Below are positions 50,979-62,386 of a stretch of DNA of 64,000 bases, one piece after another. The stretch spans positions 151,028 through 215,027 of IMG/VR virus record IMGVR_UViG_3300046804_003469; one strand, 5' to 3'. The stretch's first letter is position 1, and each line of letters begins with the position of its first letter. The notes beneath the pieces were generated by a model that saw only the letters and a list, made by a program, of their open reading frames with translations, had not been told where the DNA came from and searched no databases. The position numbers and the translations under genes are program-made.

Positions 50979-51064
50979 TGTTTTATGGGTTTCAGAAGTC
51001 CAAATTCTGAGTAATTCCCACCCCTTCCATGCCTCTCAACGATGCACAAACAGGAAGGTCTCTT

Positions 51065-51138
51065 GGGCTAGTAACTCAGTGGAATAGAGTAACGCTCTTC
51101 TAAAGCGTGAGTCGTTGGTTCGAATCCAACCTAGCCCG
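51065..51138 (+). tRNA. tRNA-Arg(UCU)
   Basis: GGGCTAG/CTAGCCC, ACGCT-CTTCTAA-AGCGT, GTTCGAATC. Confidence 0.95.
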
Positions 51139-57126: not shown

Positions 57127-57360
57127 ATGAAAATGAATCAAGAAATCGAAAAACTTCCATCCTTTACAATTGAAGAGTTTCAGGCAGACTTTGACAATCT
57201 TATGGAAAGAGTAGAAAACGGAGAAACACTACTCATTAAAAGTCAACATGGTAATGCATTAATGGTTCCTTACAAAGAAGTGGTTAGTATATGTAACGAA
57301 GCAACTATAGATTTTGATGAAATAGTTAAAATCCATACAGACCACGAAGAAGGTTCTTGA
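57127..57360 (+). CDS. Phd/YefM antitoxin-like protein
   Basis: FTIEEFQADFDNLMERVENGETLLIK...ALMVPY pattern. Confidence 0.6.
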   Translation: MKMNQEIEKLPSFTIEEFQADFDNLMERVENGETLLIKSQHGNALMVPYKEVVSICNEATIDFDEIVKIHTDHEEGS

Positions 57361-57677: not shown

Positions 57678-57707
57678 TTGACAGAAACCCTGTCAAACCT
57701 GTATAAT
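57678..57707 (+). promoter_or_regulatory. Sigma70 promoter with inverted repeat over -35
   Basis: TTGACAG-AAACC-CTGTCAA; TTGACA-18 nt-TATAAT. Confidence 0.65.
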
Positions 57708-57729
57708 ACATAGGTCAACAATCAAAACA

Positions 57730-57945
57730 ATGACTCTTACAGCAAAATTCAAGAAAGACATCCAAACCCTTCGTGGTGCAGCAAACGGCGAATTCTATCT
57801 CGACGTAAAGAATCCGAAACTTTACAAAAAAGTTCGTCGTTACTATGAAAACGAAGGTGTAGTATTCTCTGGTGATCCTATGGATGATTATGAGATGCTT
57901 ATGGAATATGTCTACAACGATCTTGAAACTGCGGACGTTGCATGA
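57730..57945 (+). CDS. Conserved cyanophage hypothetical
   Basis: KFKKDIQTLRGAANGEFYLDVKNPKLYKKVRRYYENEG. Confidence 0.8.
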   Translation: MTLTAKFKKDIQTLRGAANGEFYLDVKNPKLYKKVRRYYENEGVVFSGDPMDDYEMLMEYVYNDLETADVA

Positions 57946-57996
57946 GTAAATAGTCACGGATGGACTTAAACAGCACTGGTCGGGAGCAAACCCCTA

Positions 57997-58224
57997 ATGT
58001 CAAAGACAAGTATCTTAAGATATCTTGGCAATCTTCTCCTCATTATTGGTTATCAAACTATGTTATGGGGAGATTTTAAATATGGTTTGATGATTAAATG
58101 TGTTGGAGGTTTACTCACAGTACCTTTTGCAATCAAACTTAAACTTTGGGATGTATTATTCCTATGTGCTTTCTTTGGTATTTCCGAGATATCGAAGGTT
58201 GTACAACTTTTCTCAGTTAGTTAA
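57997..58224 (+). CDS. Small multi-TM protein nested in structured RNA region
   Basis: 75 aa, three hydrophobic segments. Confidence 0.7.
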   Translation: MSKTSILRYLGNLLLIIGYQTMLWGDFKYGLMIKCVGGLLTVPFAIKLKLWDVLFLCAFFGISEISKVVQLFSVS

Positions 58225-58351
58225 AACTGAGTGGTGGAGTCAAATGACCCATTTGGTTTCTTGCCTTTCCATTAAAAGGCAAGTGGTGCGGATGGGATAA
58301 CTCCCGCCTGGTTTCTTGTTTCCAGTCAAAGAACAAGTGGCGAGCCTGAGC
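58205..58351 (+). ncRNA. manA/wcaG-like cis-regulatory RNA (three tandem pseudoknot-TGGYG modules)
   Basis: Repeated stem + TGGYG units; UGGYG repeats and position upstream of sugar-nucleotide genes match my recollection of the cyanophage wcaG/manA motifs. Confidence 0.75.
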
Positions 58352-58358
58352 ATTTTTT

Positions 58359-58394
58359 AAGTGGGTTGCATAAACCCACTTTTTTTATTATAAT
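58359..58394 (+). terminator. Terminator hairpin with embedded sigma70 promoter
   Basis: AAGTGGGTT-GCATA-AACCCACTT + T run; TTGCAT-17 nt-TATAAT. Confidence 0.75.
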
Positions 58395-58423
58395 ATATAC
58401 TCTAGTCGATATTACAATAAACA

Positions 58424-58630
58424 ATGACTGAACAACAACTTCATTTACAACAATTAATTAAACAGCAAAGTGAAATTGCTCAAGAGATTCAAAGTTTAAA
58501 TACTTTACTTCTTTCGAAAAGGGAAATTCTTTTGAAGGTACAAGGAGCAATTGAATATCTTCAGCAAACTGGTGTAACTCTTCCTGAAGCAACAGAAGAA
58601 GTTGAAACTAGTCAAGAAGTAGAATCGTAA
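58424..58630 (+). CDS. Small coiled-coil protein
   Basis: LKVQGAIEYLQQ motif, 68 aa. Confidence 0.7.
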   Translation: MTEQQLHLQQLIKQQSEIAQEIQSLNTLLLSKREILLKVQGAIEYLQQTGVTLPEATEEVETSQEVES

Positions 58631-58648
58631 TATTCTTATAACTTTGTT

Positions 58649-59518
58649 ATGTATAAAGGTATTATTCTTGCTGGAGGGCAAGGGACAAGACTTTATCCTT
58701 CATCATTAGTTGTTTCTAAACAGTTGATGAATGTTTATGATAAACCTTTAATTTATTATCCAATAAGCACATTGATGATTGCTGGAATTAGAGAAATATT
58801 GATCATTACAAATTCATATGATTTGGATCAATATCAAAAACTTCTTGGAGATGGATCTCAATGGGGAATTTCTCTATCTTACCAAACTCAAGATAAACCC
58901 AATGGTATATGTGAAGCATTTATCATTGGGGAAAATTTTATAGGTGATGATAATGTATGTTTAATATTGGGTGATAACATTCTTTATGGGAATAATTTAG
59001 AATCGATATTGAAAGAATGTCAAAGAAAAAATGGGTCAACTATTCTTTCTTACCCAGTTAAAGATCCAGAAAGATTTGGTATAGTTGAATTTGAAGGAAA
59101 CACGGTTTATTCTATTGAAGAAAAACCAACCAATCCAAAATCAAATTCTGCAATTATCGGAATGTATTTTTTTGATAATAATGTGATTAATTATGCAAAG
59201 GAAGTGGTTCCTTCTCCAAGAGGAGAATTGGAAATAACTGATTTATTGGAAAAATATTTGCAACAAAAAAGTCTTAAAGTTAAGACTCTTCTTAGAGGAA
59301 TTACTTGGATTGATGCTGGAACATTTGATTCATTATTATTAGCATCAAATTTTATTTCAACTGTGGAAAAAATTCAATCATATAAAATTTCTTGTCCAGA
59401 AGAGATAGCATTTAGGAATAAATGGATTGATACAAATCAATTTAAATCTCTTGCAGAATCACTAATTAAAAGTGATTATGGGAAATATCTTTACACAATA
59501 TATCAACAAAATGTATGA
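58649..59518 (+). CDS. rfbA: Glucose-1-phosphate thymidylyltransferase
   Basis: GIILAGGQGTRLYP, SKQLMNVYDKP, LILGDN, RGELEITD, WIDAGT. Confidence 0.96.
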   Translation: MYKGIILAGGQGTRLYPSSLVVSKQLMNVYDKPLIYYPISTLMIAGIREILIITNSYDLDQYQKLLGDGSQWGISLSYQTQDKPNGICEAFIIGENFIGDDNVCLILGDNILYGNNLESILKECQRKNGSTILSYPVKDPERFGIVEFEGNTVYSIEEKPTNPKSNSAIIGMYFFDNNVINYAKEVVPSPRGELEITDLLEKYLQQKSLKVKTLLRGITWIDAGTFDSLLLASNFISTVEKIQSYKISCPEEIAFRNKWIDTNQFKSLAESLIKSDYGKYLYTIYQQNV

Positions 59519-60438
59519 CTATTTTAGTTACTGGAGGGGCAGGATTTATCGGAAGTAATTTTCTTCATCACTTAGTTTCTAATATGAATGAAGAAGTTAT
59601 TTGTATTGATAAATTAACTTATGCTTCTGATTGGAATAATATTCCAGATCCTGTTAAATTTTATACAACTGATATTGCTGATGAGCATAATTGTGAATAT
59701 GTTTTTAAGAAACATAAACCATCAACTGTGTTTCATTTTGCAGCAGAAACACATGTTGACAATTCAATTAAAGATTGTTCACAGTTTATACATACCAACA
59801 TTATTGGAACAGTTAATTTATTAAATCTTTCAGTAAAATATAACGTAGAGAAATTCATACATATTTCTACTGATGAAGTTTATGGATCTATTGATAAAGA
59901 TTATTTTACTGAGCAATCAAATTATAATCCTAAAAATCCTTATTCAGCATCTAAAGCATCTAGTGAGCATTTTGTAAATGCATTTAATAATACTTATGGA
60001 TTGCCAACAATTATTACAAACTGCTCTAATAATTATGGACCAAGACAACATACGGAAAAATTAATACCTCAAACAATAACAAACTTATTGTCTGGAAAAA
60101 AGGTTCCTGTATATGGTGATGGAAAACAAATAAGAGATTGGTTATACGTTCAAGATCATTGTGAAGCATTATTTGAAATTTTTCTCAACGGAAAAGTAGG
60201 AGAAAAATACAATATTGGTGGTGAATGTGAAATTAAAAATATAGATTTAATACGAATGATTCTTGATCGTATGAATATGAAGGAAAATATGATAGAATAT
60301 ATTGAAGATAGACCTGGACATGATCGTAGATATTCTACAGACATTACAAAAATCCGTCATGAATTAAAATGGTTTCCAAGATTTAACTTGGATGATGGAT
60401 TAGATAAAACAATTGCTTGGTACTCAAAACAACATTAA
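59515..60438 (+). CDS. rfbB: dTDP-glucose 4,6-dehydratase
   Basis: TGGAGFIG, AAETHVD, STDEVYG, YSASK, NCSNNYGP, DRPGHDRRY. Confidence 0.96.
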   Translation: MTILVTGGAGFIGSNFLHHLVSNMNEEVICIDKLTYASDWNNIPDPVKFYTTDIADEHNCEYVFKKHKPSTVFHFAAETHVDNSIKDCSQFIHTNIIGTVNLLNLSVKYNVEKFIHISTDEVYGSIDKDYFTEQSNYNPKNPYSASKASSEHFVNAFNNTYGLPTIITNCSNNYGPRQHTEKLIPQTITNLLSGKKVPVYGDGKQIRDWLYVQDHCEALFEIFLNGKVGEKYNIGGECEIKNIDLIRMILDRMNMKENMIEYIEDRPGHDRRYSTDITKIRHELKWFPRFNLDDGLDKTIAWYSKQH

Positions 60439-60448
60439 TTTTTCAATT

Positions 60449-62386
60449 ATGACTGATTTAAATTCTTCTTACATTGTATACAAACCTTGGGGTAAAGAGG
60501 TATGGTTAGAACTTAATGATAAGTATTGTTATAAAAGACTTTATATTAATTCTGGAACAAAAACTAGTTTTCAATATCATGAAAAAAAGTTAGAAACTAA
60601 TTTTATTATTGAAGGAACCGCCGAAGTTTGGTTGGAAAATGATGAAGGTGTTGTTGAGAAAAAAATAATGCACTCTGGTGAGTTTTTTACAGTTCAACCA
60701 CCAAGAAAACATAGAGTCATTGCAATTACAGACCTTATATTGCAGGAAGTATCTACTCCAGAAGTTGATGATGTGATTAGAATTTCAGATGATGCTTCTC
60801 GGGGTAATGGAAAAATTGAACATGAACATTTTAAACCAGCATTATGCATCTTGACTGCTGGAGTTGGAAAGAGGTTAGAAGATCTGTCGCAACATATTAA
60901 TAAGTGTTTATTACCTTTAGATAACAAAGCAATCATATCTCATATTATTGATAAGACTCCAAAAGAATATGAGATTGTTGTTGCTCTTGGATATAAAGGA
61001 GATATGGTTCAAGAGTATTGTGAAGCAGCACATCCAGATAGAACATTCAAATTTGTAAAGGTTGATAAGTATGTGGGTGAAGGATCTGGCCCTGCTTATT
61101 CAATTAGTAAGTGTAAAGAGCATTTACAGAGACCTTTTATATGGGTTACTGGAGATACAATTGTTACTAATGATCTTCCTCCCGTAAATGAAAACTGGTT
61201 AGGAATTTATCCAACAAGTATTCCTCAACTTTATTCTACTGTTAATATTGATAGTAATATCGACAGTGATACTGTTATTGGGTTTAAAAATAAAGATGAA
61301 AATGGATACGATTATGCATTTATTGGACTATCTGGTGTTTATGAATTTGAAAAATTCTGGGAACAACTTGATGTTGAAAGTGGTGAAATAGTTAGTGCAT
61401 ATTATGATATCAATCAATATTCTTCAATTAAAGCTAAAAAGTTTGATTGGTATGATGTAGGAACAATTGATAATTATTTGAGATCTCAAAAATTATTTGA
61501 AGATTCTAAACAGTATAGTATTCCTAAAACAAATGGAGAGTTTTTATATAAGTTAGAGAATCGTTTTATAAAATTATCTTCAGATGATAGTTTTATTAGT
61601 GGAAGAATAAAAAGGTCTGATGATTTGGATTCTTTAGTACCAAAATTAAATTACAAAGGAACACATTTATATTCTTATGAATGGGTTGATGGAGACACTC
61701 TTTATGATTGTAATAATACGAATGTTTGGAAAAGGTTTTTAGAATTTTCTAATCAAAAATTATGGGAAAGAGTGGATACTGATAGTACGTTTAATCAAAC
61801 GTGTAAAAAGTTTTACTATGATAAGTCTATTGATAGATTAAAATTGTTTTTAGATAGAAGAGATTCTTCATTTGCTGGAAACCATATTGTAAATGGTTTA
61901 CCAACAAAATCAATTTATGAGTTGTTAGAAAAATTTAATTGGGAAACTTTATATACTGGAATTCCAACAAAAATTTTCCACGGAGATCTTCAATTTGATA
62001 ATGTTGTTTATGGAAAAGATAACAAGTTTTATCTTTTAGATTGGAGACAAGATTTTGCTGGTAATAATATTGGTGATGTATACTATGATCTTTCCAAAAT
62101 GTATGGTGGCATATTGATGTCTTACAAATTAATGAAAGATGATAATAATTTTTCATGTTTCATTGACAACGAAATTGTAAATTATCAGTATACTACAAGT
62201 AATGAACTTGAAGAGTTTAAATATATTTACGAAGACTGGGTGATTAACAGTTGCTATGATTTGAATAAAGTAAAATCAATAACCTCTTTAATCTTTTTAA
62301 ATATGGCTGCTTTGCATGAAGAAGTGTTTGGAAATCTTTTATTCTTTAAATCCAAACAAATGTTGCAAGAACTAAATGATAAATAA
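60449..62386 (+). CDS. Tri-domain protein: cupin (type II M6P isomerase-like) + nucleotidyltransferase + choline/aminoglycoside-kinase-like domain
   Basis: KPWG...SFQYHEKKLET...H...EVSTPEVDDVIR; TAGVGKRL...NKCLLP...WYDVGT; HGDLQFDN...LLDWR...YYDLSK. Confidence 0.85.
   Translation: MTDLNSSYIVYKPWGKEVWLELNDKYCYKRLYINSGTKTSFQYHEKKLETNFIIEGTAEVWLENDEGVVEKKIMHSGEFFTVQPPRKHRVIAITDLILQEVSTPEVDDVIRISDDASRGNGKIEHEHFKPALCILTAGVGKRLEDLSQHINKCLLPLDNKAIISHIIDKTPKEYEIVVALGYKGDMVQEYCEAAHPDRTFKFVKVDKYVGEGSGPAYSISKCKEHLQRPFIWVTGDTIVTNDLPPVNENWLGIYPTSIPQLYSTVNIDSNIDSDTVIGFKNKDENGYDYAFIGLSGVYEFEKFWEQLDVESGEIVSAYYDINQYSSIKAKKFDWYDVGTIDNYLRSQKLFEDSKQYSIPKTNGEFLYKLENRFIKLSSDDSFISGRIKRSDDLDSLVPKLNYKGTHLYSYEWVDGDTLYDCNNTNVWKRFLEFSNQKLWERVDTDSTFNQTCKKFYYDKSIDRLKLFLDRRDSSFAGNHIVNGLPTKSIYELLEKFNWETLYTGIPTKIFHGDLQFDNVVYGKDNKFYLLDWRQDFAGNNIGDVYYDLSKMYGGILMSYKLMKDDNNFSCFIDNEIVNYQYTTSNELEEFKYIYEDWVINSCYDLNKVKSITSLIFLNMAALHEEVFGNLLFFKSKQMLQELNDK

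What the first reader, a model, noticed from the sequence alone, without database searches (positions are those of the whole stretch)
57951..58351. Three tandem covarying pseudoknot modules (manA/wcaG-like RNA) with a protein gene nested inside
Seen: a unit [P1 5' arm]-TTT-[P2 5' arm]-[loop containing P1 3' arm]-[P2 3' arm]-TGGYG occurs three times. Unit 1 (58205-58236): AACT/AGTT with CTCAGTT/AACTGAG. Unit 2 (58254-58288): TGG/CCA with CTTGCCTTT/AAAGGCAAG. Unit 3 (58308-58342): CTGG/CCAG with CTTGTT/AACAAG. Both helices change sequence yet keep pairing, while the TTT linker and TGGYG are invariant. Units 1 and 2 are each followed by a small hairpin. A fourth related element (AGTC-ACGGATG-GACT hairpin, then TGGTCGGGA..ACCCC) sits at 57951-57996, and the 75-aa membrane ORF lies between it and unit 1, with its stop codon in the loop of unit 1. 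Known: wcaG and manA RNA motifs are orphan riboswitch candidates of cyanophages upstream of sugar-metabolism genes. Inference: a multimeric ligand- or protein-binding RNA controlling the rfbA island through the terminator at 58359, with translation of the nested ORF able to unfold unit 1.
Basis: partly seen in the sequence, partly recalled or inferred. Interest (0 to 1): 0.78.

Follow-up and report, generated by a model that had tools for sequence, protein, structure and literature searches.

The report
Four-module wcaG RNA with nested gene
This is a cyanophage copy of the already catalogued but functionally unexplained wcaG RNA, seen here in a fuller form than the database model: four small repeated RNA modules with a real 75-residue membrane-protein gene between the first and second.

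Summary
Unit 1, the "fourth element" and the ORF lie outside the model.

In 86 related phage contigs the RNA usually has three or four modules, and Rfam models only the last two. There are two module types:
- **Type A:** an H-type pseudoknot.
- **Type B:** a hairpin plus one covarying long-range pair.

Both end in UGGY followed by a G-rich hairpin with a bulged A. Covariation is strong for the pseudoknots of units 3 and 2 and for the type-B hairpin. Unit 1's claimed P1 (AACU/AGUU) is not conserved in homologues.

The 75-aa ORF (phrog_2318) is a real gene. In 18 of 18 contigs it sits between module 1 and module 2.

At least 56 of 77 arrays end at an intrinsic terminator that also looks like an early promoter. 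About ten run into tRNA genes instead. The first downstream gene is a nucleotide-sugar enzyme in at least 34 of 56 cases.

Function is untested. I favour a multivalent factor-binding 3' RNA domain.

Verdict: a known family in a new architectural variant, of moderate interest.

The parts
57678..57707 (+). Sigma-70-type promoter (TTGACA, 18 nt, TATAAT; 12 of 12). It is the likely start of the early transcript that carries the two small ORFs and the RNA modules.
   Evidence: a consensus match only, function not tested
57730..57945 (+). 71-aa ORF, phrog_552, function unknown. Its stop codon lies 6 nt before module 1.
   Evidence: E 1e-26; homologues in many cyanophages; high contig depth in metatranscriptomes
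57952..57981 (+). Module 1, type B. Hairpin AGUC 57952-55 / GACU 57963-66 with heptaloop ACGGAUG, an A-rich linker, a long-range pair C57957:G57973, then UGGUC 57977-81.
   Evidence: Alignment A6 of 65 homologous modules: all 4 hairpin pairs have changes on both sides, 98.8% of cells paired, 0 of 500 shuffles reach the observed score. The long-range pair is C:G 49, U:A 15, other 1.
57982..57994 (+). Spacer hairpin GGG/CCC holding a Shine-Dalgarno-like GGAG (57983-86), 3 nt before the ORF's AUG.
   Evidence: the block GGGAGCAAACCCC(U)U-AUG recurs, with small variations, in the contigs that have the ORF
57997..58224 (+). 75-aa ORF with three hydrophobic segments, phrog_2318, nested between module 1 and module 2. 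Its last codons form the UUU linker and the 5' arm of module 2.
   Evidence: E 5e-20; 16 homologues, 52-89% identity; 63 Synechococcus phage records. No Pfam, NCBIfam or PDB match.
58205..58236 (+). UUU 58209-11, hairpin 58212-18 / 58225-31, UGGUG 58232-36. The possible P1 (AACU 58205-08 / AGUU 58219-22) is not conserved.
   Evidence: (28 homologous modules; the hairpin covaries although its 5' arm is coding). A model built from terminal modules gives only 11.1 bits, E 2.1.
58236..58250 (+). Spacer hairpin GG-A(bulge)-GUC / GACCC.
   Evidence: the same GAGUC...GACCC follows 'alpha' modules in the other loci
58254..58288 (+). P1 UGG 58254-56 / CCA 58269-71, UUU, hairpin 58260-68 / 58275-83, UGGUG 58284-88. 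This is the first hairpin of Rfam wcaG.
   Evidence: P1 pair types GAG/CUC, AGG/CCU and UGG/CCA; 44 of 62 modules pair, against 35.4 +/- 2.7 after permutation. 29.3 bits with model R1.
58289..58308 (+). Spacer hairpin CGGAUGGGA..UCCCGCC, the middle hairpin of Rfam wcaG.
   Evidence: alignment
58308..58348 (+). P1 CUGG 58308-11 / CCAG 58322-25, UUU, hairpin 58315-21 / 58331-37, UGGCG 58338-42, tail AGCCUG 58343-48.
   Evidence: all 4 P1 pairs have changes on both sides, 91.7% paired, covariation score 0.573 against 0.230 in shuffles, 0 of 500. This pseudoknot is already annotated in Weinberg's alignment.
58359..58394 (+). Intrinsic terminator (stem 58359-67 / 58373-81, T run to 58386) overlapping a promoter-like pair: TTGCAT 58366-71 in the loop, 17 nt, TATAAT 58389-94. 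It resembles a PeSL.
   Evidence: at least 56 of 77 arrays have a terminator, 49 have a -10-like box after the T run, and 31 have a TTGMMW box in the hairpin at 17-nt spacing. PeSLs: PMC2839356, PMC4122927.
58424..60438 (+). Downstream genes: 68-aa ORF (phrog_20934), rfbA-like nucleotidyltransferase 58649-59518, dTDP-glucose/GDP-mannose dehydratase-like gene 59515-60438.

Best explanation
The locus is the full, four-module form of the cyanophage wcaG RNA. Host RNA polymerase probably makes it from the sigma-70 promoter at 57678 as part of an early transcript that also encodes a 71-aa and a 75-aa protein. The transcript would end at the terminator at 58359-58386.

Each module is a small fold. 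Type A is an H-type pseudoknot. Type B is a hairpin with one long-range pair. Both hold out the bases UGGY next to a G-rich hairpin with a bulged A.

I propose that the UGGY sites, about 53 nt apart where the modules are contiguous, together bind a multimeric factor, more likely a protein than a metabolite. On this view the RNA works as a stable 3'-terminal domain of the early transcript, acting as a decoy or scaffold. In other phages it would be cut out of tRNA-cluster transcripts. It would not be a classical 5'-leader riboswitch. Translation of the nested ORF would transiently unfold module 2.

- **Shown:** family membership, module structures and covariation, the usual count of 3-4 modules, the nested gene, and the terminator, promoter-like or tRNA context.
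- **Inferred:** transcript ends, factor binding, and any decoy or scaffold role.
For: - **Family:** Rfam wcaG, 101 bits.
- **Module census:** 86 loci have mostly 3 (31 loci) or 4 (48 loci) modules. The architectures B-gap-AAA, BBAA, BB-gap-AA and BAAA recur. Spacing between contiguous UGGY sites has a median of 53 nt, IQR 50-55.
- **Shared invariant:** UGGY plus the following hairpin is what both module types have in common.
- **Published view:** Weinberg et al. themselves note that a duplicated UGGYG suggests a dimeric protein.
- **3' end:** at least 56 of 77 arrays end 9-28 nt before an intrinsic terminator. In about 10 others a GC hairpin and then a same-strand tRNA gene follow within about 35-60 nt. 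Either would give a 3' hairpin after termination or RNase P cleavage.
- **Position:** a -35/-10 pair sits in or after the terminator. In Syn9 a TTGACA-17-TATATAAT promoter follows the array. The RNA therefore lies upstream of the next promoter, not between that promoter and its gene.
- **Downstream genes vary:** sugar enzymes, hli, tRNAs, porins and large proteins.
- **RNA libraries:** contigs of four metatranscriptomes are piled on units 2-3 and stop at the terminator (weak evidence).
Against: - No binding factor is known or predicted.
- At least 34 of 56 first downstream genes are nucleotide-sugar or polysaccharide enzymes. That is the classical signature of a cis-regulator, although shared synteny could also produce it.
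- The high conservation of unpaired bases and the pseudoknots also fit a metabolite aptamer.
- There are no 5'/3'-end data. The contigs come from relatives, carry no strand information, may include DNA, and map best where the sequence is conserved.
- No promoter lies directly upstream of the RNA, so it would have to be a 3'-UTR-derived species.
- All loci were collected through the 'beta' spacer pattern, so the census is biased towards arrays that contain it.
Confidence: 0.35

Rival explanations
1. Cis-acting control of termination, the reader's and the literature's view. The folded array binds a metabolite such as an NDP-sugar, or a protein, or RNA polymerase itself as the put and EAR RNAs do. 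This changes read-through of the terminator at 58359 into the rfbA/rfbB island.
For: - The terminator lies 9-28 nt after the last module in at least 56 of 77 arrays.
- At least 34 of 56 distinct first downstream genes are GDP-mannose dehydratase/epimerase, cytidylyltransferase, rfbA, mannose-6-P isomerase or glycosyltransferase genes. Upstream genes vary.
- The structure is complex, conserved and pseudoknotted.
- Weinberg et al. rate the motif as a probable cis-regulator and possible riboswitch.
- From general knowledge, polysaccharide operons often use processive antitermination (ops/RfaH, EAR).
Against: - By eye I saw no conserved pairing between the last module and the terminator's 5' arm. 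The stems vary freely.
- The terminator hairpin and T run carry a -35/-10 at 17-nt spacing in 31 arrays, so downstream genes could be transcribed without the RNA.
- About 10 arrays are followed by tRNA genes, and Syn9's is followed by a promoter.
- In this window a separate 68-aa ORF lies between the terminator and rfbA.
- ORF insertions between modules are unusual for an aptamer.
Confidence: 0.3
2. A structural 3'-end or intercistronic element that protects the early mRNA from ribonucleases or directs its processing, with no ligand involved.
For: - Modules sit at stop codons, between cistrons and before terminators.
- Each is a compact pseudoknot or hairpin.
- The region folds better than shuffles, z = -3.6.
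Against: - A terminator hairpin already protects the 3' end.
- Strict conservation of the single-stranded UGGY and of the loop GG points to recognition rather than bulk stability.
- The module number is held at 3-4.
Confidence: 0.15
3. A receptor for tRNA 3' ends. Each UGGY would pair with the RCCA end of a tRNA, as the UGGN bulge of T-box leaders does, so the array would sense or hold tRNAs.
For: - UGGU and UGGC are complementary to ACCA and GCCA (seen directly in the sequence; T-box pairing is general knowledge).
- Arrays lie in or next to phage tRNA clusters on the same strand.
Against: - Four bases of complementarity are weak evidence.
- No T-box or other tRNA-binding family matches.
- No specifier-like element was seen.
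- tRNA clusters and this RNA may simply share the early hyperplastic region of the genome.
Confidence: 0.04

Closest known systems
wcaG RNA motif (Rfam RF01761; Weinberg et al. 2010, PMC2864571)
   Same: 58252-58351 matches the whole 98-position model at 101 bits. It has the three hairpins, both UGGYG motifs and the published pseudoknot of the 3' hairpin. The host type (T4-like cyanophage) and the polysaccharide genes downstream also agree.
   Different: - The model covers only the last two of the usual three or four modules.
- Not described there: the pseudoknot of the first hairpin, the 'alpha' module, the type-B module, the nested ORFs, the terminator/promoter-like element and the tRNA context.
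- The flanks of Weinberg's own alignment do show extra units, but they are not annotated.
manA RNA motif (RF01745)
   Same: An orphan riboswitch candidate of cyanophages near sugar genes.
   Different: No match in 57700-58700 even at E<=10 and none in the window at gathering score. This RNA is not a relative by this test.
PeSL promoter-terminator cassettes of T4-like phages (PMC2839356, PMC4122927)
   Same: A stem-loop terminator fused to a sigma-70-like early promoter, lying between small genes of a variable region.
   Different: - PeSLs were described in coliphages and vibriophages.
- Here the -35-like box lies in the hairpin loop.
- Function is untested.
- A cyanophage study found few PeSLs in S-PM2.
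Protein-sponge RNAs with repeated sites (CsrB/RsmZ type; general knowledge)
   Same: A short single-stranded motif is displayed repeatedly by repeated small folds, and the RNA ends in a terminator hairpin.
   Different: The motif is UGGY, not GGA. The modules are pseudoknots, usually only four. No partner protein is known. The RNA is part of an mRNA.
Processive antitermination RNAs (HK022 put; EAR/epsC of Bacillus; general knowledge, epsC)
   Same: A structured RNA lies just upstream of terminators, and for EAR this is in exopolysaccharide operons.
   Different: There is no sequence or model similarity, and action on RNA polymerase is untested.
Tandem aptamers (glycine, preQ1-I; general knowledge)
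   Same: Repeated homologous small folds, some of them H-type pseudoknots.
   Different: Those have a proven ligand and lie in 5' leaders with an expression platform. Neither is shown here.

Membership tests
wcaG RNA (RF01761) | Covariance-model score at or above the gathering score of 42 bits over the whole model | tested here: met
   101.1 bits, model positions 1-98 of 98, at 58252-58351
wcaG RNA (RF01761) | Three hairpins with UGGYG after the first and the third | tested here: met
   alignment; UGGUG 58284-88 and UGGCG 58338-42
wcaG RNA (RF01761) | Pseudoknot between the bases 5' of the third hairpin and its loop (SS_cons_1 in Weinberg's alignment) | tested here: met
   CUGG 58308-11 / CCAG 58322-25. 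In 48 homologues all 4 pairs covary and 0 of 500 shuffles reach the score.
wcaG RNA (RF01761) | Found in T4-like cyanophages or marine samples, upstream of exopolysaccharide or high-light genes | tested here: met
   Relatives are Synechococcus and Prochlorococcus phages. zwf, gnd and tRNA genes lie upstream and rfbA/rfbB-like genes downstream.
manA RNA (RF01745) | Match to the covariance model | tested here: not met
   no hit at E<=10 in 57700-58700 and none at gathering score in the window
Riboswitch (as a functional class) | Specific binding of a small molecule by the RNA | not testable with these tools
   No experimental paper on wcaG was found in the library searched.
Riboswitch (as a functional class) | An expression platform whose pairing competes with the aptamer (terminator/antiterminator or SD sequestration) | tested here: inconclusive
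   The terminator follows 9-28 nt after the last module, but I saw no conserved competing pairing by eye in 56 sequences. This was not scored formally. The GGAG before the nested ORF lies in the spacer hairpin of module 1.
PeSL (promoter-early stem-loop) | A sigma-70-like -35/-10 combined with a terminator stem-loop in an intergenic spacer | tested here: met
   In this window the -35-like TTGCAT shares only 3 of 6 bases with TTGACA. It is followed by a 17-nt spacer, TATAAT and the hairpin at 58359-81. The same layout recurs in 31 of 56 terminators. Promoter and terminator activity are not tested.
H-type pseudoknot (structural class) | Two helices in the order S1 5', S2 5', S1 3', S2 3', each supported by covariation | tested here: met
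   Met for modules 3 and 4. Not met for module 2 of this window, whose P1 is not conserved. For module 1, S1 is supported and S2 is a single covarying pair.

The most novel reading that the evidence does not exclude
The wcaG 'riboswitch candidate' would really be the 3' half of a four-site RNA. T4-like cyanophages would make it early, as the tail of small mRNAs or within tRNA transcripts. It would tolerate whole genes inserted between its modules, and it would act by binding a multimeric protein through four UGGY sites, as a sponge or scaffold, rather than by sensing a metabolite.
Probability: 0.3. Interest if true: 0.7.

Novelty: new variant of a known kind. Interest (0 to 1): 0.5.

Why it matters
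wcaG has been an orphan riboswitch candidate since 2010, and I found no experimental paper on it in the library searched.

- **Size of the unit:** the functional unit is usually three or four modules of two interchangeable types, not the 98 nt in Rfam. This changes which construct should be probed and which ligands or proteins are worth seeking.
- **Context:** genes nest between modules, and the array sits before a terminator/promoter-like element or before tRNA genes. These facts bear on whether it is a riboswitch at all.
- **Annotation:** the RNA is miscalled as a protein (Syn9 gp208), and the real 75-aa gene is missed in many deposited phage genomes.

Tried and rejected
- **manA kinship:** rejected, no Rfam hit.
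- **Unit 1 as a clear copy of the terminal module:** a covariance model built from 48 terminal-type modules gives unit 1 only 11.1 bits, E 2.1, equal to the best random hit. Its homology rests instead on the 'alpha' module alignment.
- **P1 of unit 1:** rejected as a conserved feature.
- **A three-pair second helix for type-B modules (YGG with CUG of CUGG):** all its positions are invariant or change on one side only, so there is no evidence for it. The single pair of columns 13:32 covaries instead.
- **Antiterminator pairing with the terminator:** none seen by eye.
- **Transcript ends from public RNA runs:** only assembled contigs of relatives were available. They show presence in RNA libraries, not ends or strand.
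- **Function of the 75-aa protein:** no Pfam, NCBIfam or PDB match. The Atlas gives only weak leads (DUF6552, CBU_0592, NMN_transporter).
- **Syn9 transcriptome literature:** not in the searchable library.

Full report
**What is there**

The window is the last 64 kb of a 215,027-base virus record rated complete. The region carries zwf, gnd, nine tRNA genes, an abiF RNA and nucleotide-sugar genes. Its relatives are Synechococcus and Prochlorococcus myoviruses, so this is a T4-like cyanophage.

Rfam's wcaG model (RF01761) matches 58252-58351 end to end at 101.1 bits against a gathering score of 42. Nothing in Rfam covers unit 1, the element at 57951-57996 or the ORF, and manA does not match even at E<=10.

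A mechanical scan for TTT, a hairpin, then TGGYG finds the three tandem units, while shuffled windows give 1.26 hits over both strands. The whole phage genome has only this one array.

**What was already published**

Weinberg et al. 2010 describe wcaG as a probable cis-regulator and possible riboswitch of marine samples and cyanophages, upstream of exopolysaccharide or high-light genes. Their supplement notes the two UGGYG motifs and suggests a dimeric protein. Their alignment annotates three hairpins and one pseudoknot, that of the 3' hairpin.

The flanks of their alignment already show three or four tandem units, left unannotated. Later papers only list the motif in new phage genomes, and I found no experiment on it.

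**Comparative data**

A pattern for the middle spacer brought in 119 IMG/VR contigs, of which 88 are real wcaG loci. The rest are GC-rich chance matches and serve as negative controls.

Two kinds of module emerge.

- **Type A.**
  - Terminal modules (48 sequences): all four pseudoknot pairs and six of seven hairpin pairs change on both sides. 95% of cells pair, and no shuffle of 500 reaches the observed score.
  - 'Beta' modules (unit 2 type): the 5' triplet pairs with the start of the loop in 44 of 62 distinct modules, against 35.4 +/- 2.7 after permutation. The pair types are GAG/CUC, AGG/CCU and UGG/CCA. This second pseudoknot is not in the published model.
- 'Alpha' modules (unit 1 type): those not overlapped by a gene covary (AAG/CUU, GCG/CGU, GGG/CCU, GAG/CUC). 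In the ORF-overlapped form found in this window the 5' arm is fixed as AACU by the codons for Gln-Leu, and the loop matches it in only about 5 of 17 homologues. The hairpin itself does covary, although its 5' arm is coding.
- **Type B.**
  - In 65 distinct modules all four hairpin pairs change on both sides and 98.8% of cells pair.
  - The second loop base and a base four positions before UGG form C:G in 49 sequences, U:A in 15 and something else in 1. In the window this pair is C57957:G57973.

Both module types are followed by a G-rich hairpin with a bulged A. UGGY plus this hairpin is the invariant that all modules share.

**Architecture**

Counting both types, 79 of 86 loci have three or four modules (31 and 48 loci). 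The commonest layouts are B-gap-AAA (13 loci, the window's layout), BBAA (13), AAA (10) and BB-gap-AA (8). Contiguous UGGY sites are a median of 53 nt apart, and the gaps cluster near 255 nt.

The gaps are genes. In the window the gap is the 75-aa ORF, which matches phrog_2318 over its whole length. It is 52-89% identical to 15 homologues and occurs in 63 Synechococcus phage records, often unannotated.

In all 18 contigs that carry this ORF, a type-B module with the spacer GGGAGCAAACCCC(U)U ends just before its AUG. The Shine-Dalgarno-like GGAG lies in the small spacer hairpin. An 'alpha' module overlaps the ORF's stop codon.

In other phages a different small ORF lies between modules 2 and 3. 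The Rfam model represents only the 3' half of the usual unit.

**Context**

A perfect sigma-70 promoter lies at 57678-57707, followed by the 71-aa ORF (phrog_552), module 1, the 75-aa ORF and modules 2-4. A strong terminator follows at 58359-81 with a T run.

Across loci:
- At least 56 of 77 distinct arrays have such a terminator 9-28 nt after the last module.
- 49 of these have a TATAAT-like box just after the T run.
- 31 have a TTGMMW box (TTGACA, TTGCAT and similar) in the hairpin, exactly 17 nt upstream of that box.
- In the window these are TTGCAT 58366-71 and TATAAT 58389-94.

This layout resembles the composite promoter-terminator cassettes (PeSLs) of other T4-like phages.

In about ten other arrays the last module is followed by a GC hairpin without a T run. 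A tRNA gene on the same strand follows within about 35-60 nt, often tRNA-Gly(UCC). In Syn9 the array is followed by a TTGACA-17-TATATAAT promoter for hli, and the annotated gp208 simply overlies the RNA.

On the other hand, the first downstream gene is a GDP-mannose dehydratase/epimerase (16), a cytidylyltransferase (10), rfbA, mannose-6-P isomerase or a glycosyltransferase in at least 34 of 56 distinct cases.

Contigs of four metatranscriptomes pile up on the 71-aa ORF and on units 2-3 and fall away after 58363. They come from relatives, have no strand and may include DNA. They show presence in RNA libraries and nothing more.

**Mechanism**

Nothing here tests function, so the following is argument from position and form. 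These features fit a multivalent binding platform, more likely for a multimeric protein than a single metabolite pocket:
- a fairly constant set of three or four sites,
- interchangeable module types,
- one shared single-stranded motif,
- tolerance of whole genes between modules.

Three positional facts fit a stable 3' domain (3'-UTR-derived or RNase-P-released) better than a 5' leader. The RNA lies after coding regions. It lies before a terminator hairpin or a tRNA. It lies upstream of the next promoter-like site. I give this reading 0.35.

In it the array governs read-through of the adjacent terminator into the sugar genes, as a riboswitch, through a protein, or by modifying RNA polymerase as put and EAR RNAs do. 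The enrichment for sugar genes and the tight spacing to the terminator support it. The lack of an evident competing pairing, the overlapping promoter-like site and the tRNA and hli contexts weigh against it.

A purely protective or processing role (0.15) and a T-box-like pairing of UGGY with tRNA RCCA ends (0.04) are not excluded.

Translation of the nested ORF must open module 2, because its last codons are the UUU linker and the 5' arm. That much follows from the sequence. Whether it matters is unknown.

**Verdict**

This is a genuine member of a known family, in an extended architecture that neither the Rfam model nor the papers I could search describe. Interest is moderate.

Noticed in passing
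window 58359-58394, and the same position in L003-L117: The terminator after the RNA doubles as a promoter-like element, with a -35-like box in the hairpin loop, the T run, then TATAAT at 17-nt spacing. The stems covary while the loop sequence is conserved. It looks like the PeSL cassettes of other T4-like phages, which I did not find described for cyanophages in the library searched.
   Followed up: partly
window 51023-51059: An abiF RNA (RF03085, 51.7 bits against a cutoff of 37) lies 5 nt upstream of a tRNA gene (51065-51138) inside the tRNA cluster.
   Followed up: no
window 57127-57360: A 77-aa ORF between two tRNA genes matches the Phd-like antitoxin family (phrog_375, E 2e-12; Pfam PhdYeFM below its cutoff). 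No toxin partner was looked for.
   Followed up: no
L121 829-987 (Syn9 NC_008296 163128-163286, gp208): The annotated protein gp208 of Syn9 lies over the wcaG modules and is probably not a gene. Conversely, the homologue of the 75-aa ORF has no annotated feature in the listed ACG-2014f records.
   Followed up: partly
window 57960-58079: A 39-aa ORF starts inside module 1 (MDLNSTGR...). In four related contigs an in-frame ATG at the same place extends the 75-aa ORF by 13-15 residues. These are most likely artefacts of reading through the RNA module.
   Followed up: partly
window 58203-58218: The invariant C-terminal Gln-Leu-Phe of the 75-aa protein is encoded by the bases that form the conserved UUU linker and the start of the hairpin. 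This stretch is under both protein and RNA constraint.
   Followed up: partly
L013, L052, L059, L060, L063, L084: In six contigs the tRNA gene that follows the array is tRNA-Gly(UCC). Whether this pairing means anything is unknown.
   Followed up: no
window 60413-62386: A 657-aa ORF combines a cupin / mannose-6-P isomerase-like N-terminus with a nucleotidyltransferase domain and a long unassigned C-terminal part.
   Followed up: no
window 57718-57921: The 71-aa ORF (phrog_552) has the highest summed contig depth of the stretch in one aquatic metatranscriptome (up to about 8900, against about 100 for the 75-aa ORF). It is basic at the N-terminus and acidic at the C-terminus. Its function is unknown, and it precedes module 1 in several phages.
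   Followed up: no
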